Shown here piece after piece: positions 3,001-26,228 of a stretch of DNA of 64,000 nucleotides. A model generated the notes under the pieces. The model was given only the letters and a program-made list of their open reading frames with translations. It did not search any database and had not been told where the DNA came from. Location of the stretch: NCBI RefSeq assembly GCF_048593235.1, contig NC_133618.1, positions 48,022,478 through 48,086,477 of the forward strand, in the 5' to 3' direction. The position numbers and the translations under genes are program-made. How positions within the stretch are numbered: position 1 is the stretch's first letter; every line of letters starts with the position of its first letter. Origin of the DNA: Sminthopsis crassicaudata. Taxonomy: Eukaryota.

Positions 3001-3051
3001 TGTCTGACACACAATAGCTGCTCAGTAAATCGCTTTTCGGTTTCTCTGCAG

Positions 3052-3156
3052 TGGTGCCGATGATCTGTTACCCATCCTGTCTTATGTGGTGTTGAAGAGT
3101 AACCTCCCCCAGCTGGTGTCTGAGTGTGCAGCCCTGGAGGAATTCATCCACGAGGG
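3052..3156 (+). CDS. VPS9D1: VPS9 domain-containing protein 1, penultimate coding exon
   Basis: Acceptor tttctctgcag, donor GG|gtag. Translates (x)[34 protein letters not shown](G), the VPS9-domain GADDLLP motif as in human VPS9D1. Upstream exons were not found and probably lie left of the window. Confidence 0.95.
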
Positions 3157-4419
3157 GTAGGGGTGAGATCAATGCTGAAAGGGCCAGGGAGGCTGGAAGA
3201 GATAAGGGTGGGCTCCTGTGAATCTTTCAGGAAGGGCTTGCTCCTCTTTGAACTGAAATTTGGCTGCTGGAAGGAGATTTGGAGAAAGGGCTAGAATTGG
3301 TCCCAGAAGTCCGGGAACTCTTGGCTGGGTCACTGATCGGGTCAGTCAACATCCTGGGTCGTGATTCAGAAATACTCTATAATTAGCAGTCATTACACAG
3401 ATAGTTACATGGAGTGGGTGCTTTCCTTGCCATGGCCCTGTTTATCTTAAAATTGTTTAGTCTCTCTCTTTCCCATACATACCCTGCTGACTTTGTTCAA
3501 CCTGGAGTCTCTCCTTAAATCCTCTCCTCTTTCTAGGAAGTTAATAAGAGCATTGACTCCTTAGGCCTTTTTTTTTTTTTTTTTTTTTTTAAGCTGAAAT
3601 CATTAGAAGACAAACAGAAAAGAAAGATATAATTATGTCATCCCCACTCTCCCTTCCATTGTGTCCTCCCTTTGCCCTCATCACCATGGATGTGGGAAGA
3701 AAAGGCAGGAAGTCACCCCTCTCTGGGGTCAGAGCCATTTGCTCACTAGCTGACAGTTCTGCTTATGAAACTGGACATCTTGGCAGCCTCCCTGGGGTAT
3801 GACTTGGGAAGCAAGCTGAACCACTGGACCTTGGAGTCATCTGAACCTTAATGTGATAGGACAGGAAAGGGAGGGAGACCGAAGGTAAAGGTGGAGCTTG
3901 AATGTTATGGAAAGCAATATCTCTGGGAGCATAGGCACCTGCCAGAGAGACCTCGGAGCTGTTTGGACCCCTGCCTTCCAGTCACTTAGCCATTTCTTGG
4001 AGCTGTCTTCCTCAGTCTCTTGGGGTATACACAGACAGAGCTCCTCTCATTCTCAGCAAGGCCACATTTTTTATTTACAAGGGCAAGAGTTGCTAAGATC
4101 CATAACCCTTTGGCCCATCAAATGTCCTCCAGGTTGGATAAAAACTGGAGTGTCAGTTTGTAGAGTTGAGTATATCTCTAACTTCACCATGAGCTCCCTA
4201 TTCCATTGGAGCCTTTGGGTCTCCAGGGCACTGCACCCAATAGGTGCTCAGTAAATGCTTATTGAGGTTCCTTCCAGCTTCTTGGTCTGCTGCGGGCAGA
4301 AGCAAATGAAGCAGCTGCATGTGCCCGACATTGGAGGGACTTCAGCCCAGGTGTGACGCAGAGACCGATGGCACAGGGTTGCCACCCTGACAGTGGCTTC
4401 TGTATGACTTTTGTGCCAG

Positions 4420-4513
4420 GTATCTGATTGGAGAAGAAGGCTACTGTCTGACCTCGCTACAGAGTGCCCTGAGCTATGTGGAACTGCTGCCACGGGGGGC
4501 TTTGGTGAAGTAG
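4420..4513 (+). CDS. VPS9D1: VPS9D1 last coding exon
   Basis: Acceptor gtgccag; phase 2 matches the previous exon. (G)[30 protein letters not shown], near-identical to the human C-terminus. Confidence 0.95.
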
Positions 4514-12700: not shown

Positions 12701-14133
12701 TAGATATACCTATATATTGATATGTTTCACTCCTTGGTTAGAATATATTATTATACCCTTTTGTGGATGAGAAGCTGACAGTCATGAGCAGAAGTGGAAC
12801 TTGACTTTTGACTCTACTAAAACCAATGCTAGCTCTTTTTAAAATTAAATTTTAGTTTTGAAAACAACAAAAATCCATTTTTTCTCCCTCCCACATCCCT
12901 CTTGACAACTGAAAAAAAAAAGAAAAAAAAAAAGAAAACCCTTGTAACAAATATACCTTGCAAAGCAAAACAAATTATGGTATTGGCCATGTCCAGAAAA
13001 AATCTGTCTCAGTCAGCACCAAATGCAGATTGCAGACTCTGTCTCTGTCAGGAATGGGGTCCCATGTTTCATCATGTAGCCTTCTAGAATCATTATCGGT
13101 GAATTTGAGAAGGAGGAAGACAGAAATTCCAGCAAAAAAGATCATTGATGATTTTAGAAAAGGCTATTTCAGTTGAGTGACAAGGTCAGAAGCTAGACCT
13201 AAAAGGGTTGGAAATGGGAGAAGAAAAACTGGAGGTAACAAATGAGTTGAGAAGCAATTAGAGGAGAGAAAATAGGAACAATGAAAAGCACAAATTGCAA
13301 GGAATTTGGCAGAGAGATATCGGACAGTGACTCGAGGGGATGGGAGAGCCTAGTGATGACTCCTCCTAAGGATGGGGAGAGGGGAGTGCATGTTGGCAGC
13401 AGAGACTGCTAGATCAGAGAGCAATGATTGTTTGGGTTACTACTGGAAAGGAAAAGAAAGAACGAGGTACAGAATGCATGTAAATGAGTCAGTCTTGGAT
13501 TTCTTCATCAGAGGCTGGAGTAAGAGGGGAGAAATGGGAGAGGGGTGATGTCCAGGGATTATGAGATATAGAAAAGGGAAGAAGAAGCTCAAGGCAAAGG
13601 GCCTTTATTTTCTCAATAAAGCAAGAGGCCAGGTGTTCAGTTGTGAGTGTTAGAAGGAGGAAAAGAGAAAGTATGAGATGGTTACTATAAGGGACAATCA
13701 GGGAGAAGTAGGATGTAGCTGAGAGTTGAGATCTAAAAAAGAAATGTGCAGTGGATCTGGTCACCATGGTTACACGTGGCTTATCCATCTCTGTTCTTGA
13801 GCATTTCAGGGGACAGGAAAATATTAGAAAGTTCCATTGTGACCTTGGCAAATTCAAGGTCATCATTTTTGAAAACTGTGATTTGTTGTGAGAATCAAAT
13901 GAGCTAACATGTGACACTAAACGCATCACGCTAAAGTAATTACTATTATCATGTCTCCTATTCCTTCTGTTAAGCTATCCCATGTATCTGTCAAGTTAGG
14001 TTTATTCTGTGTTCATTTATGTAGGTTTCCCCCAAATGTAAGCTCCTTGAGTACTGATTCACGTTTTTTTATTTGTATTCTCAGCACCTAGGACAGTGCC
14101 CCAGTACATACTATGTGCCTGATAAATGTTCGT

Positions 14134-14139
14134 TTTATT
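14134..14139 (-). terminator. Candidate poly(A) signal of the SDR-like gene
   Basis: tttatt on + (AATAAA on -), about 670 nt past the stop codon at 14806. Confidence 0.5.
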
Positions 14140-14805
14140 GTATTTCCTTTTTTGTGCCGTATCCAGAGGTAAGATTCAGGAGCATCTGCCCCCAAAGAAC
14201 CCTCAGTCAAGGATCAGAAGCAACTTGGAATCCGTACAAATTTTATTAAAAGAGAACAAAGTGATTGGGAGAAATATTGGACAGCTAGAAGGTGAGGAGA
14301 TAGGTTGGTGATATTATCTATCCCTAGCCGGGGGAAATACATCAGAGAAGTTGTCACTGGAAATGGCCCAGCCAAGAATCAGACCAGGCCAGTTAAGTAT
14401 TCTAGGACATAGAAGGCATTGAGAGTAGAAGAGGGGAGGATGGTGGGATGGGGGATGGGAAGACCATTGTTTCTAGATAAGGATGTTTTTCCAGGGGCTG
14501 ATGGTGTGGGGAATCATTCTCTGTGTTTCTCATCTTTTCAATTGCTCTTACCCTGTCTCCCTGATCTCTGGTCCCCTGGGATAGCAGTCAGGGAGAGGGG
14601 CTAATACTCAGATGGCTACAGATGCTACTTCTTAGGAAATGCTCTGGTACGTGACACAGAAATCAGGAGGTTCACTACAGGACGACCTAGGCTAAGGGAG
14701 CTTTTTCAACCCTTGGAATCCTCCATTGAGAGGAGGAGGAATGGCGAGGGGTGTTGATAGTGGCCAGCTGGAGAGGGGTGCATGCTTCCTGGGAGGAGGT
14801 AGGGG

Positions 14806-14982
14806 TCACAGCTTCCCATCTGAGGTCAAGACCTGAAGATCAGCAGGGGAGTTTACACACAGCACAGTGTGTGAGACAGCAAGCTTATCCACCAGGGAGG
14901 CCACAGCCTGGCCCACCTCCAGGTGGCTGACATAGCCAGGAGCCAGTGCTTCGGGGAGTGCAACCCCCATATTGATCTTCAC
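14806..14982 (-). CDS. SDR-like Rossmann-fold protein, exon 6 (last)
   Basis: Acceptor ctgcccaccatccag, phase 0. VKINMGVALPEALAPGYVSHLEVGQAVASLVDKLAVSHTVLCVNSPADLQVLTSDGKL*. Confidence 0.88.
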   Translation of the reverse strand: MKINMGVALPEALAPGYVSHLEVGQAVASLVDKLAVSHTVLCVNSPADLQVLTSDGKL

Positions 14983-15117
14983 CTGGATGGTGGGCAGAAA
15001 AAGACATCATCGGCCTCTCTCTTCCCCATTTAGAACACAGTTCAATGGAAGATGGGGGGGTTGGCCCATTTAAGGCTCAACTCAAGTATATCCTCCTATA
15101 AAAAGCTCCTCTCCAGT

Positions 15118-15523
15118 NNNNNNNNNNNNNNNNNNNNNNNNNNNNNNNNNNNNNNNNNNNNNNNNNNNNNNNNNNNNNNNNNNNNNNNNNNNNNNNNNNN
15201 NNNNNNNNNNNNNNNNNNNNNNNNNNNNNNNNNNNNNNNNNNNNNNNNNNNNNNNNNNNNNNNNNNNNNNNNNNNNNNNNNNNNNNNNNNNNNNNNNNNN
15301 NNNNNNNNNNNNNNNNNNNNNNNNNNNNNNNNNNNNNNNNNNNNNNNNNNNNNNNNNNNNNNNNNNNNNNNNNNNNNNNNNNNNNNNNNNNNNNNNNNNN
15401 NNNNNNNNNNNNNNNNNNNNNNNNNNNNNNNNNNNNNNNNNNNNNNNNNNNNNNNNNNNNNNNNNNNNNNNNNNNNNNNNNNNNNNNNNNNNNNNNNNNN
15501 NNNNNNNNNNNNNNNNNNNNNNN
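15118..15523. other. Assembly gap (406 N) in intron 5 of the SDR-like gene
   Basis: Run of N; the exons on either side join in frame without it. Confidence 0.99.
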
Positions 15524-16295
15524 TATCAGTTAACAAGCAACTATTAAATATCTACTCTATGACAGGCACTGCTTCCATGCTACCCACTATGTTTACACCT
15601 TCCCTTCTTCAAATGCCATGTTTGCCTCAGTTTCCTCACAGTAAAATGAGTTGGAGAAGGGAATGGCAAACCATCCCAGAACATTAATACACTACAATAG
15701 AGCCATCAAGCCATTTGCCCCAAGGTAGGAAATGTAGAGAGCACAGGCAATAATATTATCATACCATCCATACTTCCTGGTGTCTTGAATGAATTCTTAC
15801 CCCCCCACCCCTGCCATATACACACACACTGGGCCTCCATAACACATATACTGATGATTGCCTCAGGCACAAAAATCACTCATAGCTCTGCAAATTCATC
15901 CTAATTTTACAAAATCCAACCCAAATGCCACTTTCTCTATGAAGTATTCCCTGATCCCTCAGCCAGTAAAGACCTTTTCCTCCTTAGATCTTACATAACA
16001 GCTCACACCTCTCTTCTGTGCTCATCAGATATTGTTTGTATTACAGCCAGCTGCATCCCTCTTCTAGACCCTGAGTCCAGGGGAGCAGGGGCCGTGTCTT
16101 TCCTAAAATCTTCCTGTCTCTTCCAGAACTAGCCCAGGGGGGCTGACTTGAATACTGATATCTTCTGCTTCCTTTTTTTGTGCCCTATCCAGAGGTAAGA
16201 TTCAGGAGCATCCACCCCCAAAGAACCCTCAGTTCTTTCCCTCCCTGCTCTCCACCTCAGATGCCTGATACAGACATTTCCCTAGGGCCCCTTAC

Positions 16296-16420
16296 CTCAT
16301 TCAGCTTACAGGGTACATCAGGGTATTCCTCACGAACCACCTTGCTGAAGGATAGAGCCCCTGCGGCCCCCAGGGTGAGGAAGCCTGTGCCCGGCCTGAG
16401 CAAATGATCTCCTGCCCCCC
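16296..16420 (-). CDS. SDR-like protein, exon 5
   Basis: Acceptor ccactctcttctag (phase 1), donor GAG|gtaagg (phase 0). (G)GAGDHLLRPGTGFLTLGAAGALSFSKVVREEYPDVPCKLNE. Confidence 0.88.
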
Positions 16421-16560
16421 CTAGAAGAGAGTGGAAAGGTGGGATAGAAGCTGGGCAAATGATCTCCTGCCCCCCCTAGAAGAGAGTGGAAAGGTGGGAT
16501 AGAAGCTGGGCAAATGATCTCCTGTCCCCCCCAGAAGAGAGTGGAAAGGTGGGATAGAAG
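16400..16560. repeat. 55-bp tandem repeat x3 spanning the exon-5 splice acceptor
   Basis: Unit gcaaatgatctcctgccccccctagaagagagtggaaaggtgggatagaagctgg starts at 16400, 16455 and 16510; the third copy has 2 substitutions. Confidence 0.97.
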
Positions 16561-16693
16561 TAGGGCATCCAGTTGTGAGGTGAGACAGAAGGGGATCACT
16601 CTGCTGGGGCTCCCCCACCCCCAGGGGACTCTAGAATGGCACCGACCTGTTGGTCACCTTGCTTATTGCTCAGTTCCAGGGGCAGAGCCTCAC

Positions 16694-16790
16694 CTGTGAT
16701 AAAAGTGTATGAGCCCCTCGGGTTCTCCCAGACCAGGGGAAAGAAGGCTTTCCAAGCAGTGAAGGTACTCAGGAGCAAGGTCTCCAGGAC
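16694..16790 (-). CDS. SDR-like protein, exon 4
   Basis: Acceptor ctcctgcttag (phase 0), donor ACAG|gtgagg (phase 1). VLETLLLSTFTAWKAFFPLVWENPRGSYTFIT(G). Confidence 0.9.
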
Positions 16791-16902
16791 CTAAGCAGGA
16801 GGGAGCTTTTTCTTAGCTACAATTCTCCTTGCCTTTCCTTCTCGCCCTCCCCCACTGCTATCCTCTTCCCTTGTTCCTCCCTCTCCTCACAGCCCCTCTT
16901 AC

Positions 16903-17042
16903 CCACTGTAGTTCCTTCAGGCTCTGAGTGTGGGGTGCTCCCCCTTGCCACCAGCTGAAGCCCAAAGAGGAGACCACATCAGTGACCTTCCTGCCTCCTT
17001 CCAGCAAGGACACCTTCGCTGCTTCTGCTCCATCCTCAGTGC
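16903..17042 (-). CDS. SDR-like protein, exon 3
   Basis: Acceptor ttccctctgcag (phase 1), donor TGG|gtaaga (phase 0). (S)TEDGAEAAKVSLLEGGRKVTDVVSSLGFSWWQGGAPHTQSLKELQW. Confidence 0.9.
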
Positions 17043-18152
17043 CTGCAGAGGGAAAGGGAGCCAAGGGGGTGGGTAAGAGACTGGAGCTCTCCCTTCCCTC
17101 TGTCCTGTCTTGGAGAAAGCTACTGAGAAGTTCTCTGAAGACAGCCACATTTCTCTAGGAGAGAGCGTGTCAGGGTACCTAAGGGAAGGAGTATTCTTCA
17201 TTTGTCATTCCTAGATCATCCTAGCCCCAGATCGCTCTTAGGAGCTGCCCAAAATTGGGGAGCCCCAGAGCAGCCTCTTGCTGTGCCATAGTGTTTGCCC
17301 TCTGGAGTCAGAGGACCAGGATTCAAATCCCATTTCCAACACTTACTATCCCTGTGATTTGGGCCAAATGTTTAATCTCTATGGGCCTCGATTTCTTCAA
17401 TCATCTACGAATGGAAAGAGTTCTGGACCTGTCCTCAGGGGCCTGGATCCTTTTCAGATGGGAGCAGGATAAGATGGCCACTGAAAGCCCTTTCGGTTCT
17501 GAAATTCAGGCCTGTGATGTGAATTCAAATCCGGCTCTTCTCTGAACAAGCTGCTGGTTAAACAGCTCTGGGGTTGTTTTCTTATCTGTAAACTGAAGAG
17601 GTGTATTAACTCACAGATTTAGAGCTGGATATGATTCCCTTCTGGATACTTTATACTCTTTACAAACTGAATGACTTTTCTCTTTGTCAGCCAACAGGTA
17701 TTTATTAAACACTTACTGTTTGCAGGGCCCTGTGTTCTCCTGCCTCTATGCCTTTGCTTATGTTATTCCCTATGTTTATGATGTCCCCCACTTCCCAACT
17801 TCAAATGCTATAAATGTAACAAGATGGGATCATCAGGGCTTTGTCCCAAAGGAGACAATGTAGAGAACACAGACAGTAATATCATCAGTACTTCCTAGTG
17901 TCTCAAAGTACCACCCCCCCTTTCAGTGATTGCTCATGGCTACGCAGGTAATGTCAGAAATGGAATATGAACTCAAGTCTTCTGATACCAAATCCAACAC
18001 TCTTTCCACTGCTCTGCCTCCAGAGCAAAAGTTCTTAATTTTCAGTCTGTGAACTTTTTAAAAATTTTAAAATAATATTTTATTTTTCCCCAATTAAATA
18101 TTAAAACAATCTTCCTTTTTCACATTTAAATTTTACTTTTTTTAGGTTTCAC

Positions 18153-18301
18153 TTTCTTTTTTTCTTTTTTCTGAGGCTGGGGTTAGTGACTTGCCCAGGG
18201 TCACACAGCTAAGAAGTGTTAAGTGTCTGAGACCAGATTTGAACTCGGGTCCTCCTGAATTAAAGGCTGATGCTCTATCCACTGCGCCCCCTAGTTGCCC
18301 C
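18153..18301 (-). mobile_element. WSINE1-type CORE-SINE nested in a MITE remnant
   Basis: Reverse complement begins ggggcaactagggggcgcagtggatagagc, has B-box gagttcaaatc and a T-tract tail on +. Confidence 0.9.
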
Positions 18302-18756
18302 TCAGTTTCAATTTCTATCCCTCCAACAGTTTGGCAGAAAAAAAAAATTGACAATTGTATTTTAATAGAATTTATTTCCTTTATAAAACTATGCATTTTA
18401 ATTTGTGCATTTAAAAACATTATTTTGAGGAAGGGGACAGGCTTTACCAGCCTGATTAAAGAGTCCAGCAAAGATTAAAAGCCCTGCTTTAGGGTACTAT
18501 TCCTTTCAGTATTCATGTATGAATCTCTGACTGAAGGTGCTGGATTAAATTCAGGAAGCTCAGAGGCAAGTTCTCACCTTTCTTTCCCCTCAGCCTTCAG
18601 CTTTGGTCCCTGCTGGCTCCTCCCTGTACATTTCTCCCCAGAACACATGAAGAGTTCACATTAGCTCTTGGTGCAAGACCAAGACCCAGCCCCACTGGCA
18701 GGGGCACTCCCAGAACCCCTGTCGCACCCCACCCTAGAGCAGAGGTAGTGACTCAC

Positions 18757-18864
18757 TGACATCCCCGACCACAGTAAACAGGCGATTGTGGGCTTCTGCA
18801 GGTAGGAAGTTCCGAAGCTTCTCCAGGCGTGTGGCATCCCGGGAAATGACAGCAACTTGGAACC
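18757..18864 (-). CDS. SDR-like protein, exon 2
   Basis: Acceptor cctccacctccatag, donor GTCA|gtgagt, phase 1/1. (G)FQVAVISRDATRLEKLRNFLPAEAHNRLFTVVGDV(S). Confidence 0.9.
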
Positions 18865-20596
18865 CTATGGAGGTGGAGGAAGGTCAGGAGGTAGAATCAA
18901 GAATCTACAGGGTGGGATCCCACTGGCCAAAAGTGTGGCCAGGAGAATCTCTGTCAAAGCTGGCCCTATACACAAATGAATCCCAGAAATTTAGAATTAG
19001 AAGCCCCAGAAACCATCTGATCCAAATAACATGAGAAAGTAAAATTAGAGGAGACGAGAATTCAAATCTCAATTGTCACTTCCTTTAATTTTAGGCAAGG
19101 CTTCCTTACTTGGGCTTTGATTTTCTCATCTCTAAAATGAGAGAGCTGATAGATGAAGATTATGGAATAATATTATTCTTCTGTAAAAATTGATGAACAA
19201 GCTGATTTTAGAAAGGCCTGGAAAGATTTACACAAAGTGACACTGAGTGAAACAAGCAGAACCAGTAATGCATTGTACACAATGATAGCAAATATATTTG
19301 ATGATCAACTATGAAAGACTTGGTTATTCTTAGTGGTTCAGTGATCCAAAGCAATCCCAATAGACTTTGGACAGAAAATGCCATCTGTAGCCAGAAAAAG
19401 AACTGTGGAGACTGAATATAAATCAACACATTTCACTTCTTTTTTTTTTTCCTCTCCCATGGTTTTTCTTTTTTGGTTTGCTTTTCCTCTCTCAATATGG
19501 TTCATAAAGCAATGTGTATTAAAAATAAATAAATTTTCAAAAATTTAAAACAAAAAAAATGAGCTGGGAGATATCAAAGTCAAAGGAGACCAGGGTTCAA
19601 GTATCAGCTCTGCTAGTTCCTTTAACATTAGACAAAGCTTCTCCGACTTGGGCTTCCATTTCCTCATCTCTAAAAGGAGAAAGCTTGAAGACTCAGAGTC
19701 ACTTCATCTTTGTTTTGTCTGTTTGTTTCATTGGGGCTTAGGAAGCCCATAGAATTCTCAGAATGATTAATATTTCTAAAATTCATAATTGTTAAATTGC
19801 TGGATTTCACTAAAATATTAGTGAAAATGAAGACTTTTTTTTTCACCCAAGTTCATGGAGCCCCTGAAATATATATGCATGGACTCCAGGTTAAGAATCC
19901 CTGGATTGAATACTTTCTATTTGAATTTTCTAGGACTATAACCATTTCATTTTATGGGCTAAATGATGTCCAGATTTAAATAGTCTGGCCCAGGGTGACC
20001 CAGATAAGGAGTGTGGGAGATGGGGATTGGGAGGATCGGAACCCTGGATCCAGTCCTGCCTGTCCTGGGATCTACAACTGGGATGTTCTCCTTAGGGTTC
20101 TGGCCATTTCTCATCCCATCTCTGCACATCCTTCCCTTTCCAAGTGCACTGGAAAAGAAAGAGCTTTAGAAAAAAAAAAAGCAGCACTTAATCAGCCTCT
20201 ACGGAAATCCCGGGGCTGGATTGGAATGAAAAATATGGGTTTAACTCCTTCCCAGGTGCTGGGAGAGTATCCTTCCAGGATCTTGGGGAGTGAGACTGGA
20301 TTTACATCCCCAGCAAGGTCAAGTGGAAAGCACATCGGATTTGGATTTATAGTCAAAGGACTTCTGTTCAGAATTCGACCTTGCTACTTTCCACCTGTGT
20401 GACCTCTTTGGGTCTCGTATCCCCTTTTGTAAAATGGCAACTTGGACTCAAGTTCCTTCTAGTTCTAAATCCTATGACCCAGGCTTGCTCAATCTGGGAT
20501 TTCCTAATACTCCCACCCTGTATCCACCTGTGGCTTCGAGCTCCCCCCCCCCGGGGGCCATGATCCCCCCCATCACCCTCTCCCCGAATCCCTCAC

Positions 20597-20681
20597 CCTT
20601 CTCCAGGAGCGACTTCACAATCCCAGAGCCCACGGTCCCAGCTCCTCCCAGCACGAGGACCAGGCGCTCAGAAGGGGACAT
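20597..20681 (-). CDS. Short-chain dehydrogenase/reductase-like (NAD(P)-binding Rossmann fold) protein, exon 1; gene = join of 20681-20597, 18864-18757, 17042-16903, 16790-16694, 16420-16296, 14982-14806 (732 nt, 243 aa)
   Basis: ATG with A at -3, donor AAGG|gtgagg. MSPSERLVLVLGGAGTVGSGIVKSLLEK(G) carries the Gly-rich GxxGxxG dinucleotide-binding motif. The six exons join with matching phases and no internal stop. Confidence 0.9.
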
Positions 20682-21770: not shown

Positions 21771-22399
21771 AAGAGCACTCTGTCCAGTGAGTCTTCTAGT
21801 AGCTAATAATAACAACAATAGTAACGGTAGCTAGCATTTATAAAGGGATTATTATATGCAGGTACTGTGCTAAACACTTTACAAACATTCTATCATTTGA
21901 TCCTCACAACAACCCTGGAAGGTAGATACTATCATTATCACCCCTGTTTTACATTTGAGGAAACTGAGGCAGAAAGAGATTAAATGACTTGCTCCGAGTC
22001 ACCCACGTAAGACACCCAAGGGTGTGAGGCAGAATCTGAATTCAGGTCTTGCTGCCTTTGGTGGCAAAGGGATGGCATCCGGGGCCTGGAGTCTGAGCGC
22101 GGCGACTTGCGGCTTGTGGTCCTCGGCTCTATCCGCTGACCGGCCTCGCTGTCTCGGAGTCCTTGGGAATTCACTCCACATTTGGAGAGCGCTTTCTGCA
22201 CACTAAGCCCAAAATAACCTTTCTCCAGTTTCTGCCCTGGATTTTGCCGTTCTTCGGAGACTGGCATCAGGCCCGATGGTTTGGCCTCCAAACTCCGGTG
22301 CTTTCTATGTCCCAATGGCTTTCCTTTTTCCCAGAGCGCACTGTAGAACAGCATCAAAAAGCTGAGGTTTCTATGGCCACGACCCACCTCCAAGCCCTG

Positions 22400-24500
22400 C
22401 TTACACCTCCGCGAGCCTTCCAAGGGTTGGCAGTGCCCTCTGCGGGGCCAGCTTTGTGTCCCTGGGTTGGGGGCTGTGTTTGTGGCACGACCCTCCTCGG
22501 TCTGGGCCTTGAGGTCTCCCGCGGGTCTGAGCTCTGGGCCGCGGGCGGGATGGGCAGGCCCGAGGCCAGCTTCTACCGCCTGGGAGCCAGCTCGGGCCTC
22601 CGTGGCCCGGTGTTGCCCCTGGCGTCCCAGGGAGACTGTGGCAGCGGGAGGGAGGTGGGCAGAGGAGGGAAGGGCCGGACGGCCCCGGCTCCGTCGCTGC
22701 CACAGGGAACACTCGTGGTTAGAACTGGGAAGAGTCCGGGGCTGTTGTCCCCGCCCAGGCTCTCAGAAGGGCTCGCGGCAAAGCGGGGCCAGGCTGGGAC
22801 GGGAGCCCAGACCTGGTCTCAGTGCGAGTCTTCGGTGCCCCGACGCCTGGGGAGGAAACGTCGCTTCCCCAAGAGCGAGGCGCCTCGGGCAGAGCGCGCG
22901 ATTTTCCCGGCGCTCTCGGGCCGCTGCCGGACCGAGGGGAGCCCCCCCCCCCACTTGAGTCGTGAGTTTTGGATCACAGAACTTCCAAACCCTCTGACTC
23001 CAGAGCGCAGCGGCGCCGTGAGCCCGCGAGCCGGGGGGCACGACCCTCTCCTCCTGCACAGGAGGAAACTGTCCCGGAGGACAGGGCTTGGCTACTGCCA
23101 CACAGCTACCCCGACCTCCGGAGCCCGAATCTGATGAGGTGAAGAATCGAAGCGCTCCTGATCCCCGGTGCGGGCCCTCCCCTTTTCACCAGCGCCCCTC
23201 ACCCACACCCCTCCCTTCTCTGGAGAAACCCCTCATCTCCTTCGGTCCGGCGAGGACACAGTTAAACTTCCAAATTGGGCGGGGACGGGGGGGCGGAACC
23301 CCAAACCCCGCCCCACATGCGTCAGCCCTCGTGTCTGACCAATGGGGGGGCGAGACCCCCGCGAAGCCGGAAGGGCCCTGTGGGTCCATTGGGCTCCGGG
23401 CTGTGCGGCGGGCGTTGGAGGCGACTCCTGGAACCTGGACAGGTAAAGACGCCTCCCCGGCTTCCCGCCTCCCCTTCCCTTTCCCGTCCTCACCCCAGGC
23501 TGCCATCTGGGGGCGGCCTGAGCCCGGGTCTCCGGGGGAGCACATCTGGCTTGGCTTGGCAGTCTGGGGTGGGGAGGAGTGCTGCGCTGGGGAGGGGGTC
23601 CTGGAGGAGGCCGGGGGGGGGAACTTCGCACCTAACCCCCCACCTCCCCCACCCCCAGGATGGGCGCCAGCTCCCTGTCGGAGGATTACCGTCTGTGCTT
23701 GGAGCGGGAGCGGCGGAGGGGCGGCTCGGGCGTCTGTGCAGACCCCACTCTGCGGGCCGTGCTCTGGCAGATCCTCGTGGAGGACTTCGACCTCCACGGG
23801 CTGCTCCAGGACGACGCCCTGGCCCTCTTCACCGATGGGCTGTGGGGCCGAGGCGATCTGGCCCCTGCCCTGCGCAACCTGGCGCGGGCGTTCGAGCTGC
23901 TGGAGCTGGCCGCCGTCCACCTCTACCTCTTTCCCTGGAGGAAGGAGTTCACCACCATCAAGGTAGAAGCGGGCGGGATGTCCCAGCTCTGCGTGGCCGA
24001 GGGCCCGGGATCTGCCGGGAGCTCCTGGGGCTGGGCCCGAGTGGTGTGCGGCTACGGGATGGGGGCGGGGAGCGGGGAGAAGCACGACACGCGGGGGGAG
24101 GGGGGGAGAAGGGGGAAGGGGCCCTGCCTGCCCTTTCTGGGGCTTCCGAACTTCTCCGCCCGGCCGCCAGCGCCCAGGAAGGTGCCCGCGCTCCCCAAGC
24201 CTCCTTTCCCCCCGGCGCCTCTCAGGCACCGGCAGCTTTGTTGGAGCGGGACTAAGTAGCTTTGCAGGGTAGCGGAACGTGGGCAGGCTTTGGGGTCAGG
24301 TTCAAGTCCCTTTCCGTGCCTCGGTGTCCCCACGTGTAAAACGCCCATGTGGGACCCGAGCGACTCCTCCAATCCTGCGAGCAGATGGGTGACCCCCGAA
24401 GTCACGCAGCATGAGGACGGATTAGGGGGCGGGCCCGGGTCCCGAGCGGGTGAACATCCTGCACCTGCCCTCATTTCACCCTCTCGCCTCCTGTTTATTC
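22400..24500. promoter_or_regulatory. CpG island / SPATA2L promoter, with likely non-coding exon 1 ending at donor 23443 (GGACAG|gtaaag)
   Basis: Visibly CpG-dense, with GC boxes and a CCAAT box (gaccaatgg at ~23338). A strong donor lies upstream of the acceptor (ccccag) at 23657-23658, just before the ATG. Confidence 0.75.
23660..23962 (+). CDS. SPATA2L: Spermatogenesis-associated protein 2-like, first coding exon (PUB domain)
   Basis: MGASSLSEDYRLCLERE...LELAAVHLYLFPWRKEFTTIK, donor AAG|gtag; matches the human SPATA2L N-terminus. Confidence 0.96.
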
Positions 24501-25223: not shown

Positions 25224-26228
25224 ACATTTTCGGGGGGCTACGTCCACTTCCTGAAGGGCGTGCTCTCGGAGGACCTCATCACCAAGTGCTTCCAGAAGAT
25301 GGGCTACACGAGGAAGGACCAGCACCACTTGGTCGTGGCCACGCCACCGCCGGGCTACGAGCTCATTCAGGTGGCTCTAGGCTGCTTTGCTCTGAGGTTG
25401 GAGTGCGAGATCCTCGGGGAGATCCTGACCAAGCTGGGGACCAGCCTGCTGTCTGCCGAGGAGCTGATCGAGGAGCGAAGAGCCAGTGGGGATGTGGACA
25501 CGTGCGTGGACCGGCTGAGGCGGCGGCTGGCTGGAACCGGAACGCCGCCCACCAGACCTCTGCTTAGTTACCCCGCTGGCATTGATTTGTACAGTGACAT
25601 GCTGGAAGAAGGGCCCGAGGATGGTTCTTTGTATGGTGAGCCCCTTACTGGGCCAGAGTCGCCCTCTCCAGAGTTAGCCTACCAACCCCCCATCTGGGAA
25701 CAGAGTGCCAAACTGTGGGGCACCAGCCAGATGGCCTCCAGCGCCAGGGAGCTTCGGGACAACGGGAGCAGCTGGGAGTCTCCAAGCGTGGAGGAGCCGG
25801 TGGAGGAGAGCCTGTCCTATGAAGCTTTTGAGGAACCCACGGAAGAGAGAACCACCTTCTCCTTCATCGCCCTGCGGAGGGAGCTGACCACAGAAGTTGC
25901 CGGGGGCAAGAGCCCCATCCGTTCCCCTCGGCACCTCAGGGCCACCGGGCACCTTGAGGCCGCTGAAGGGGCCCCTGCTTCTCCCTCTGCCTCTGGTGGG
26001 GAGCCCCAACGCTACCAGCTTCACGGTTGCCTGCCAGTAGGCACTCTGCCCGCTTACTGCTGCGATACGTGCTGCCAGCTCCATGCCAGCCACTGCCAGG
26101 CCCTCTATAACTGCCGCCTGGATCACACACTGCATGAGCTGCTGAGCGAGAAGCAGCGACGTCTCTGGCTGCAGAGGACCCAGCTGGACTCCCTGCTTTA
26201 TGAGAGTCCCCCTAGAGCCAGGCCCTAG
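25224..26228 (+). CDS. SPATA2L: SPATA2L last coding exon (total 435 aa)
   Basis: Acceptor ttcttggttccag. TFSGGYVHFLKGVLSEDLI...CCDTCCQLHASHC...RRLWLQRTQLDSLLYESPPRARP*. Confidence 0.96.
   Translation, partial: TFSGGYVHFLKGVLSEDLITKCFQKMGYTRKDQHHLVVATPPPGYELIQVALGCFALRLECEILGEILTKLGTSLLSAEELIEERRASGDVDTCVDRLRRRLAGTGTPPTRPLLSYPAGIDLYSDMLEEGPEDGSLYGEPLTGPESPSPELAYQPPIWEQSAKLWGTSQMASSARELRDNGSSWESPSVEEPVEESLSYEAFEEPTEERTTFSFIALRRELTTEVAGGKSPIRSPRHLRATGHLEAAEGAPASPSASGGEPQRYQLHGCLPVGTLPAYCCDTCCQLHASHCQALYNCRLDHTLHELLSEKQRRLWLQRTQLDSLLYESPPRARP

What the first reader, a model, noticed from the sequence alone, without database searches (positions are those of the whole stretch)
14806..20681. Intact 6-exon SDR/Rossmann-fold gene between VPS9D1 and SPATA2L with no known human counterpart at this locus
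Seen in sequence: six exons with canonical AG/GT sites and matching phases give an uninterrupted 243-aa ORF, with an A at -3 Kozak, a GC-rich 5' region and a downstream AATAAA. Protein: MSPSERLVLVLGGAGTVGSGIVKSLLEKGFQVAVISRD...VVGDVS...DVVSSLGFSWWQGG...SYTFITGGAG...PCKLNEVKIN...DGKL*. Established knowledge: the human order CHMP1A-SPATA33-CDK10-SPATA2L-VPS9D1 is conserved here, but I know of no SDR gene between SPATA2L and VPS9D1 in human. Inference: this is an ancestral vertebrate enzyme-like gene retained in marsupials and lost in eutherians. It resembles, from unverified memory, uncharacterised fish SDRs such as zebrafish si:dkey-238o13.4. Its substrate would point to a metabolic step placentals dropped.
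Basis: partly seen in the sequence, partly recalled or inferred. Interest (0 to 1): 0.9.

Follow-up and report, generated by a model that had tools for sequence, protein, structure and literature searches.

The report
Annotated marsupial SDR-like gene lacking catalytic residues
The six-exon gene is real, intact and under selection, but it is already annotated (dunnart LOC141554360, the counterpart of zebrafish si:dkey-238o13.4); it is an old vertebrate gene with no placental protein found here, and its product lacks all the residues a normal short-chain dehydrogenase needs for catalysis.

Summary
**Observation: confirmed.**
- Six minus-strand exons, all with AG/GT splice sites and matching phases, give 243 aa plus a stop.
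- The N gap (15118-15523) lies inside intron 5. Its flanks are collinear with intron 5 of devil and Antechinus, and relatives show no extra coding sequence there.

**Already annotated.**
- The protein is 243/243 identical to NCBI XP_074142262.1, 'uncharacterized protein LOC141554360' of Sminthopsis crassicaudata.
- 243-aa orthologues are annotated in nine other marsupials, platypus and echidna, and in reptiles, amphibians, lungfish, ray-finned fishes and sharks. Coelacanth has a partial entry.

**Ancestral and functional.**
- The SPATA2L / gene / VPS9D1 order holds from teleost to marsupial.
- Exon sizes are identical from platypus to dunnart.
- dN/dS is 0.09-0.21.

**Absent elsewhere.** No eutherian and no bird protein appeared among the listed hits of three searches.

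**Not a canonical enzyme.**
- The fold is a classical SDR Rossmann fold with an NADP-type dinucleotide site.
- The Asn-Ser-Tyr-Lys catalytic tetrad is replaced by invariant non-polar residues in all 65 aligned vertebrate sequences.
- It is more likely a non-catalytic NADP(H)-binding protein than the enzyme of a metabolic step that placentals dropped.

**Scan history.** The scan noted the missing YxxxK and the repeated exon-5 acceptor before, on this same stretch.

**Verdict:** known gene, uncharacterised family, moderate interest.

The parts
20597..20681 (-). Exon 1: ATG at 20681, codons 1-28 plus 1 nt. Encodes strand beta-1 and the Gly-rich dinucleotide motif GGAGTVGSG.
   Evidence: donor GTGAGG, A at -3. 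Faint Epimerase/Rossmann N-terminus match for the exon alone. Same 85-nt exon in devil, Antechinus, Gracilinanus and platypus.
18757..18864 (-). Exon 2 (108 nt): beta-2 with the invariant Ser36-Arg37 (NADP-type position), helix C and beta-3.
   Evidence: AG/GT, phase 1. Invariant S36 and R37 in alignment A1.
16903..17042 (-). Exon 3 (140 nt): helix D, beta-4 and the family-specific loop SSLGFSWWQGG(A/P)PHTQ, which stands in place of the SDR NNAG motif.
16694..16790 (-). Exon 4 (97 nt): helix E, carrying Leu116 at the tetrad-Asn position, and beta-5.
   Evidence: hhalign pairs FabG Asn110 with Leu116.
16296..16420 (-). Exon 5 (125 nt): the GGAG...PGTGFLTLGAA segment where the SDR Ser, Tyr and Lys should be, and helix F.
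   Evidence: Alignments to 3l77, 1vl8 and FabG. Invariant G144, A146, F157, L158, G161 and A162.
14806..14982 (-). Exon 6 (177 nt including the TGA stop at 14808-14806): beta-6, a short substrate loop, helix G and beta-7.
   Evidence: Exon-6 search hits. Reads on directly from exon 5 in all relatives.
14234..14805 (-). Probable 3' UTR, ending just past the AATAAA at 14247-14242.
   Evidence: AATAAA position. The stretch is homologous to sequence that directly follows the ORF in the intronless koala retrocopy, and that homology ends 572 nt after the stop.
15118..15523 (.). Assembly gap (406 N) inside intron 5. It does not touch coding sequence.
16396..16567 (-). 55-bp x 3.1 minisatellite in intron 4, made of copies of the exon-5 acceptor plus the first ~24 nt of exon 5. 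The middle copy keeps an intact AG at 16475 (a frame-shifting decoy); the upstream copy has AG changed to GG.
   Evidence: The same array has about 6 copies in devil and about 10 in Antechinus, and is absent in Gracilinanus and platypus.

Best explanation
This is the fat-tailed dunnart orthologue (LOC141554360, XP_074142262.1) of the vertebrate single-copy gene that ZFIN calls si:dkey-238o13.4. It is a real six-exon protein-coding gene, kept under purifying selection. It sits in its ancestral place, head-to-head with SPATA2L and tail-to-tail with VPS9D1.

Shown: the 243-aa product has a classical SDR Rossmann fold. It has an intact Gly-rich dinucleotide-binding motif and an invariant Arg right after beta-2, the position that marks NADP(H)-preferring classical SDRs.

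Shown: the four residues that carry out SDR catalysis (Asn, Ser, Tyr, Lys) are all replaced by invariant non-polar residues in every vertebrate sequence examined. They read Leu116, Gly144/Ala146, Phe157/Leu158 and Gly161/Ala162, depending on alignment register. The canonical Tyr-Lys proton relay is therefore impossible.

Inferred: the protein binds NADP(H) but does not catalyse a standard SDR reaction. It would act as a nucleotide-dependent binding, regulatory or scaffold subunit, probably as an oligomer through the strongly conserved helices E and F.

Supported only by absence of proteins: the gene was lost on the eutherian stem.

Confidence differs by part: about 0.97 for identity, orthology and selection, and about 0.45 for the non-catalytic mechanism.
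For: - Exon model and ORF.
- 243/243 identity to P0171, named LOC141554360 [Sminthopsis crassicaudata].
- 243-aa orthologues in 9 other marsupials and 2 monotremes, and across jawed vertebrates.
- Identical exon sizes 85/108/140/97/125/177 from platypus to dunnart.
- dN/dS 0.09-0.21 in all ten pairs.
- Gene tree with mammals 98/94 and marsupials 100/99.
- Synteny (in the window).
- An intronless koala retrocopy carries exactly these five exon junctions plus the 3' UTR, so the spliced mRNA existed in a marsupial germline.
- Pfam adh_short scores 42.8 bits against a 26.6 cutoff, but only over residues 7-148.
- AF2 model pLDDT 86.4, pTM 0.89. Foldseek TM 0.72-0.80 to HSD17B14, PECR, CBR4 and 3l77 at 16-22% identity.
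- Tetrad positions are non-polar in three independent alignments (3l77; 1vl8 and 3l77 by profile; E. coli FabG by hhalign), and those columns are invariant in 65 sequences with 80% mean column identity.
- Fish transcripts exist: roughly 1-kb Logan contigs encode full-length proteins, and the gene appears in differential-expression tables for trout liver and zebrafish brain.
Against: - No RNA data for the dunnart itself were available.
- NADP(H) binding is inferred from motifs only. The Tyr and Lys that normally hold the nicotinamide ribose are missing, so even cofactor binding could be altered.
- The loops around the would-be active site (SWWQGGPPHTQ, GGAGExLLMPGTGFLT) are extremely conserved. 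That would also fit an enzyme with an unconventional active site.
- Model confidence is lowest (pLDDT about 61-65) in exactly those loops.
- Model coordinates could not be inspected, so no pocket analysis was done.
- Only 120 of about 210-230 hits per search were visible, and no eutherian or bird genomic DNA was searched.
Confidence: 0.6

Rival explanations
1. It is a genuine oxidoreductase, using a non-canonical catalytic set in place of Asn-Ser-Tyr-Lys. Candidates are the invariant or near-invariant Thr143, Thr155, Thr159, His102, Cys181, Lys182 or Tyr176. Its loss removed a metabolic step in placentals.
For: - The loops lining the expected active site are very strongly conserved, including invariant polar residues.
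- The ADP-binding half of the cofactor site is retained.
- Purifying selection is strong.
- From general knowledge, divergent SDRs such as enoyl reductases place their catalytic residues differently from classical ones.
Against: - No Ser, Tyr or Lys lies within about 3 residues of any tetrad position in any of three alignment registers.
- The Pfam adh_short match ends before the active-site half.
- The substrate loop between beta-6 and helix G is short, about 16 residues.
- No residue geometry could be checked.
Confidence: 0.3
2. The apparent eutherian (and bird) absence is an artefact. Under this reading an orthologue exists but is unannotated, relocated or too diverged, or was hidden beyond the 120 rows shown per search.
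For: - Only the best 120 of 208-227 hits were visible.
- The representative library clusters at 50% identity, so a eutherian member could sit inside another cluster.
- Bird GC-rich regions are often poorly assembled (general knowledge).
Against: - With a marsupial query the ranking runs marsupials 85-100%, platypus 79%, then reptiles 74-79%. An intact eutherian orthologue should rank near the top, given the very large number of eutherian proteomes in the sources.
- The best human structural neighbours (HSD17B14, PECR, CBR4) are only 17-22% identical.
- Fragments P0001 and P0002 from the exon-6 search are closest to lizard, not mammal.
Confidence: 0.07
3. The dunnart copy is non-functional. Either the duplicated exon-5 acceptors divert splicing into a frame-shifted product, or the assembly gap hides a disruption.
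For: The decoy acceptor at 16475 matches the authentic acceptor over the last 24 intron bases and the first 21 exon bases, and using it would add 55 nt, shifting the frame. The gap's true content is unknown.
Against: - The minisatellite is shared by devil (about 6 copies) and Antechinus (about 10 copies), several with AG-bearing decoys. Yet the coding sequence among the three dasyurids has dN/dS 0.09-0.125.
- The gap is intronic and its flanks are collinear with relatives.
- The ORF is complete and identical to the RefSeq model.
Confidence: 0.03

Closest known systems
si:dkey-238o13.4 orthologue group (zebrafish name). Annotated as 'uncharacterized protein LOC...' in marsupials, monotremes, reptiles and amphibians.
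   Same: Same length (243 aa). 62-79% identity to the non-mammalian members listed, and 93% and 90% to wombat and Gracilinanus. Same six exons, same flanking genes, same family motifs.
   Different: Nothing essential: it is a member. Marsupials share a few replacements at otherwise >=90%-conserved columns: P100A, M152R, E217D and G82R/K.
Classical short-chain dehydrogenases/reductases (Pfam adh_short PF00106), e.g. E. coli FabG, human HSD17B14, T. sibiricus ADH 3l77.
   Same: Rossmann fold with 7 strands, about 240-250 residues, Gly-rich N-terminal motif, Arg after beta-2 as in NADP(H)-preferring members, TM 0.72-0.80.
   Different: NNAG is replaced by SSLG. The Asn, Ser, Tyr and Lys tetrad positions hold Leu, Gly/Ala, Phe/Leu and Gly/Ala, all invariant. 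Identity is only 16-22%.
Peroxisomal trans-2-enoyl-CoA reductase (PECR, PDB 1yxm), the automatic name given to many family members.
   Same: Best profile hit in the PDB (E 6.6e-11). Similar Gly-motif context, 'GGa.GiG..iv..Ll..G'.
   Different: The alignment covers only the N-terminal half (residues 6-136) at about 22% identity. The C-terminal tripeptide varies across the family (GKL, GNL, GKI, GKV and others), unlike a conserved PTS1 signal; PECR's own -AKL ending is from my own knowledge. The name is a similarity-transfer label, not orthology.
SDR-fold proteins without catalytic residues that act as nucleotide sensors or subunits: NmrA/HSCARG (NMRAL1), HSDL1 (Tyr replaced by Phe), complex I subunit NDUFA9, MAT2B. 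All from general knowledge, not tested here.
   Same: Rossmann dinucleotide site retained while the catalytic Tyr is lost. Conserved despite the absence of the canonical mechanism.
   Different: Most of those belong to the extended or NmrA-like branch. Here the NmrA Pfam match is sub-threshold and covers the N-terminus only (20.8 bits against a 27 cutoff). This protein is of classical length and topology.

Membership tests
si:dkey-238o13.4 orthologue group | High full-length identity to named members, and the same length | tested here: met
   243 aa. 100% to the Sminthopsis RefSeq protein, 79% to platypus, 73-78% to reptiles and Xenopus, about 70% to sharks and Polypterus, 62-67% to the teleosts listed.
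si:dkey-238o13.4 orthologue group | Conserved genomic position between SPATA2L (divergent) and VPS9D1 (convergent) | tested here: met
   In the window. Other species: Gracilinanus, devil, Antechinus, possum, platypus (SPATA2L side only), turtle, Xenopus and teleost.
si:dkey-238o13.4 orthologue group | Same exon-intron structure | tested here: met
   Exons of 85/108/140/97/125/177 nt in dunnart, devil, Antechinus, Gracilinanus and platypus.
Classical SDR (PF00106 adh_short) | Rossmann fold with an N-terminal Gly-rich dinucleotide motif (TGxxxGxG-like) | tested here: met
   GGAGTVGSG. adh_short 42.8 bits against a 26.6 cutoff. AF2 model with Foldseek TM 0.72-0.80.
Classical SDR (PF00106 adh_short) | Catalytic tetrad Asn-Ser-Tyr-Lys, including the YxxxK motif | tested here: not met
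   FabG N110/S138/Y151/K155 pair with L116/A146/L158/A162. The 3l77 Ser/Tyr/Lys pair with G144/F157/G161. All of these columns are invariant in 65 sequences. There is no Tyr or Lys between residues 140 and 169.
Classical SDR (PF00106 adh_short) | NNAG motif after beta-4 | tested here: not met
   SSLG at residues 89-92. S89, S90 and L91 are nearly invariant and G92 is invariant.
PECR (peroxisomal trans-2-enoyl-CoA reductase) | Orthology-level similarity over the full length | tested here: not met
   Sequence match covers residues 6-136 only. About 21-22% identity in the structural alignment.
PECR (peroxisomal trans-2-enoyl-CoA reductase) | Conserved C-terminal peroxisomal targeting signal | tested here: inconclusive
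   The dunnart protein ends -GKL. Across 65 members the last three residues vary: GKL 16, GNL 9, GKI 7, GKV 5, RNL 4 and others. This is not a conserved canonical [SAC]-[KRH]-[LM], and targeting was not tested.
NmrA-like / HSCARG atypical SDR sensors | Match to the NmrA family profile | tested here: not met
   PF05368 scores 20.8 bits against a 27 cutoff, over residues 6-46 only.
NmrA-like / HSCARG atypical SDR sensors | Binds NADP(H) without turning it over | not testable with these tools
   Needs a binding assay. Only motif-level inference is available (invariant Gly motif and Ser36-Arg37).

The most novel reading that the evidence does not exclude
The family is a roughly 450-million-year-old catalytically dead classical SDR. 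It kept its NADP(H) site and an invariant, remodelled 'active-site' surface (WWQGGPPH and PGTGFLT loops) because it works as a redox-state sensor, or as an obligate partner or scaffold of another protein. It was then discarded independently on the eutherian stem and in birds. It would be an undescribed vertebrate pseudoenzyme whose loss marks a regulatory rather than a metabolic change in placentals.
Probability: 0.35. Interest if true: 0.55.

Novelty: already known. Interest (0 to 1): 0.33.

Why it matters
As a gene call it adds nothing new: RefSeq already holds this exact protein.

What is worth keeping is the characterisation. This is a strongly conserved vertebrate SDR-fold family (80% mean column identity from sharks to marsupials) with no human counterpart and no functional literature beyond two expression tables. 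Every canonical catalytic residue is replaced by an invariant non-polar one.

That makes the automatic names attached to it misleading ('peroxisomal trans-2-enoyl-CoA reductase', 'L-fucose dehydrogenase-like', 'HSD17B14'). It also makes the family a clean candidate pseudoenzyme or NADP(H) sensor that can be studied in zebrafish, Xenopus or opossum.

It also adds a case to the known over-representation of SDR genes among those lost on the way to eutherians (Kuraku and Kuratani 2011, PMC3296468). That chicken-anchored screen would have missed this gene if birds also lack it.

Tried and rejected
- **Exon-by-exon Pfam and NCBIfam scans:** the pieces were too short. Only exon 1 gave a faint Rossmann N-terminus match.
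- **Full spliced protein as a query:** it could not be submitted at first because it had no single reference. This was solved by finding the identical database protein P0171 through an exon-6 search.
- **Exact look-ups:** wombat P0159 and Monodelphis P0188 were not on record. Trichosurus and the shark returned gene tables but no DNA.
- **Literature searches:** the LOC identifiers returned nothing, and 'atypical SDR / NADPH sensor / catalytic tyrosine' returned nothing. Supplements of PMC3296468 are not held, so I could not check whether this gene is in their list.
- **AFDB fold-cluster search and Atlas search:** these gave only generic SDR neighbours and the family's own cluster.
- **Sigma-70 promoter and terminator scan:** irrelevant for a eukaryotic gene and disregarded.
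- **Considered and rejected:**
  - A hidden exon in the N gap.
  - A pseudogene in the dunnart.
  - PECR orthology.
  - A eutherian origin for fragments P0001 and P0002; they are closest to lizard.


Full report
**1. The observation**

I rebuilt the model on the minus strand.
- The six exons are 20681-20597, 18864-18757, 17042-16903, 16790-16694, 16420-16296 and 14982-14806.
- Each is bounded by AG and GT, with compatible phases. They sum to 732 nt, giving 243 aa plus TGA.
- The ATG has an A at -3.
- The start region is moderately GC-rich (0.585).
- The first AATAAA lies 559 nt past the stop.

**2. The assembly gap**

The 406-N gap (15118-15523) sits inside intron 5.
- Full-length relatives read straight through the exon 5/6 junction ('PCKLNxVKINxGV') with nothing inserted.
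- Both flanks of the gap align collinearly, in the same orientation, with intron 5 of Tasmanian devil and Antechinus. There the matching stretch is about 480-500 intronic bases.
- So the gap does not affect the reading frame.

**3. Identity of the gene**

The spliced protein had no single reference, so I searched exon 6 alone against the 1.84-billion representative library.
- That search returned full-length relatives.
- Word-index searches seeded with those relatives showed a large family.
- One hit, P0171, is 243/243 identical to my model. It is NCBI XP_074142262.1, 'uncharacterized protein LOC141554360 [Sminthopsis crassicaudata]'.
- So the window is fat-tailed dunnart, and the gene is already annotated with this exact structure.

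Annotated 243-aa orthologues also exist in:
- Sarcophilus, Antechinus, Trichosurus, Phascolarctos and Notamacropus
- Vombatus, Dromiciops, Gracilinanus and Monodelphis
- platypus and echidna

Beyond mammals the family covers turtles, alligator, lizards, geckos, tuatara, frogs, salamanders, lungfish, coelacanth, Polypterus, gar, bowfin, teleosts, sharks, rays and chimaera.

**4. Orthology, synteny and selection**

- Exon sizes are identical (85/108/140/97/125/177 nt) in dunnart, devil, Antechinus, Gracilinanus and platypus.
- The gene is flanked by SPATA2L (divergent) and VPS9D1 (convergent) in the window.
- The same arrangement holds in Gracilinanus, devil, Antechinus, possum, turtle, Xenopus laevis and a teleost. 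Platypus shows the SPATA2L side.
- A maximum-likelihood tree recovers mammals (98/94), marsupials (100/99), frogs and cartilaginous fishes as clades. This fits a single-copy gene inherited vertically.
- Pairwise dN/dS (NG86) is 0.09-0.125 among the three dasyurids, 0.13-0.14 between dasyurids and the didelphid, and 0.17-0.21 against platypus. That is clear purifying selection.

**5. Evidence for a spliced transcript**

No dunnart RNA data were available, so the evidence is indirect.
- A second koala 'gene' (P0178) is an intronless copy lying inside a Staufen-family gene.
- It carries all five exon junctions of this model. It is followed by sequence homologous to the 572 nt downstream of the dunnart stop codon, ending next to the AATAAA.
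- It is therefore a processed retrocopy of the mature mRNA. That shows the six-exon transcript was made in a marsupial germline, and it suggests the 3' UTR end is near window position 14234.
- In fishes, roughly 1-kb Logan contigs encode the complete protein.
- The gene appears in differential-expression tables for trout liver (down 4.5-fold with oestradiol, PMC4556936) and for zebrafish brain after mild injury (PMC5752677).
- Those two tables were the only literature mentions found.

**6. What the protein is**

- Pfam places it in adh_short (42.8 bits, cutoff 26.6), but the match covers only residues 7-148.
- A 65-sequence alignment has 80% mean column identity.
- The AlphaFold2 model (pLDDT 86.4, pTM 0.89) is a seven-stranded classical SDR Rossmann fold.
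- Foldseek gives TM 0.72-0.80 to HSD17B14, PECR, CBR4, FabG and the T. sibiricus ADH 3l77, at 16-22% identity. It is a separate family with no close solved relative.
- The Gly-rich motif (GGAGTVGSG) and Ser36-Arg37 after beta-2 are invariant. From established SDR coenzyme rules, a basic residue at that position marks NADP(H) preference (general knowledge).

**7. The catalytic residues are missing**

Three independent alignments agree.

| Reference | Reference residues | Residues opposite in this protein |
|---|---|---|
| 3l77 (HMMER) | Ser, Tyr, Lys | Gly144, Phe157, Gly161 |
| 1vl8 (family profile) | Tyr, Lys | Thr159, Ala163 |
| E. coli FabG (hhalign), locus | Asn110, Ser138, Tyr151, Lys155 | Leu116, Ala146, Leu158, Ala162 |

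- The FabG active-site numbering is from my own knowledge.
- The registers differ by one or two residues, but there is no Ser, Tyr or Lys at a catalytic position in any of them.
- The columns named in the 3l77 and FabG rows are invariant across jawed vertebrates.
- NNAG is SSLG, followed by a family-specific invariant loop, SWWQGG(P)PHTQ.
- This agrees with an earlier scan note on the same stretch (s1-153408).

The canonical SDR mechanism is therefore excluded. Because the changes are invariant rather than scattered, the site is constrained for something else.

My preferred reading (about 0.45) is a non-catalytic NADP(H)-binding protein acting as a sensor, regulator or scaffold. The main rival (about 0.3) is an enzyme with an unconventional active site.

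The automatic names are similarity transfers:
- PECR aligns only over the N-terminal half.
- The family's C-terminal tripeptide is variable.

**8. Eutherian absence**

- With a marsupial query the ranking is marsupials (85-100%), platypus (79%), then reptiles and amphibians (73-79%). No eutherian and no bird appears in the 120 rows shown. The same is true for the turtle- and salmon-seeded searches.
- Short genomic-ORF hits from the exon-6 search are closest to lizard or fish.
- This supports loss, or at least the lack of an intact annotated gene, in eutherians, and it hints at an independent loss in birds.
- It remains absence of evidence, for two reasons. Only 120 of about 210-230 rows were visible, and no eutherian or avian genomic DNA could be searched for remnants.
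- Kuraku and Kuratani (PMC3296468) found SDR domains over-represented among genes lost before the eutherian radiation. Their screen started from chicken genes, so it would miss this gene if birds lack it.

**9. The repeated exon-5 acceptor**

- A 55-bp x 3.1 array (16396-16567) copies the exon-5 acceptor and the first ~24 nt of exon 5. One copy keeps an AG (16475) whose use would shift the frame.
- The array is not private to this assembly. Devil has about 6 copies and Antechinus about 10, some with AG. Gracilinanus and platypus have none.
- All three dasyurids keep the coding sequence under strong constraint, so the array is an old, tolerated intronic minisatellite and not a sign of decay.

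**10. Verdict**

- The evolutionary interpretation is largely right.
- The claim of an unknown gene is wrong, because it is annotated.
- The 'lost metabolic enzyme' inference is doubtful.
- Novelty: already known as a gene, with the family functionally uncharacterised.
- Interest is moderate to low (0.33). It would rise if the pseudoenzyme or sensor reading and the double loss in eutherians and birds were demonstrated.

Noticed in passing
window 16396-16567 (intron 4); L004 about 13635-14096; L005 about 13647-14357: An intronic minisatellite is built from copies of the exon-5 acceptor plus the start of exon 5. It has 3 copies in dunnart, about 6 in devil and about 10 in Antechinus, and none in Gracilinanus or platypus. 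Several copies keep AG decoy acceptors, yet the gene stays under strong purifying selection.
   Followed up: yes
L003:12525-13313 (koala, GCF_003287225.1), with 3' UTR homology to about 14335: LOC144457191 (P0178, 268 aa) is an intronless processed retrocopy of this gene, inside a Staufen-family gene. It has no stop codon yet. It has lost the start Met and has R37Q, R173C and a 3-aa deletion of Phe157-Thr159. Of its 28 differences from the koala parent protein, 22 map to the retrocopy branch. It looks like a decaying retrocopy annotated as a protein.
   Followed up: partly
protein positions 82, 100, 152 and 217 (window exons 3, 5 and 6): Marsupials share replacements at columns that are >=90% conserved elsewhere (G82R/K, P100A, M152R, E217D). 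They show 6-7 such deviations against a family median of 2, and the marsupial stem branch is long (0.17). This may reflect altered constraint in early therians, around the time the eutherian line lost the gene.
   Followed up: partly
hit lists: No bird protein appears in any list, although alligator, turtles, lizards and tuatara do. This may be a second, independent loss in birds, or an assembly or annotation gap in GC-rich avian regions.
   Followed up: no
window 22000-24300: A strong CpG-island-like block (GC 0.68-0.70) lies between the SDR gene start (20681) and the SPATA2L coding exon (25260-26228). It contains long ORFs in several frames that have no Pfam match. It is probably the SPATA2L promoter and 5' exon region, about 1.3 kb or more from the SDR start.
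   Followed up: no
window 3050-3157 and 4409-4510 (+ strand): VPS9-domain exons of VPS9D1 (PF02204, E 5e-9 and 4e-5). The 3' coding end of VPS9D1 lies about 10 kb from the SDR gene's stop, in convergent orientation.
   Followed up: yes
cluster members: Alternative RefSeq isoforms are annotated in wombat (252 aa), Monodelphis (249 aa, plus a 206-aa UniRef entry) and tammar wallaby (200 aa), suggesting alternative splicing at this locus in marsupials.
   Followed up: no
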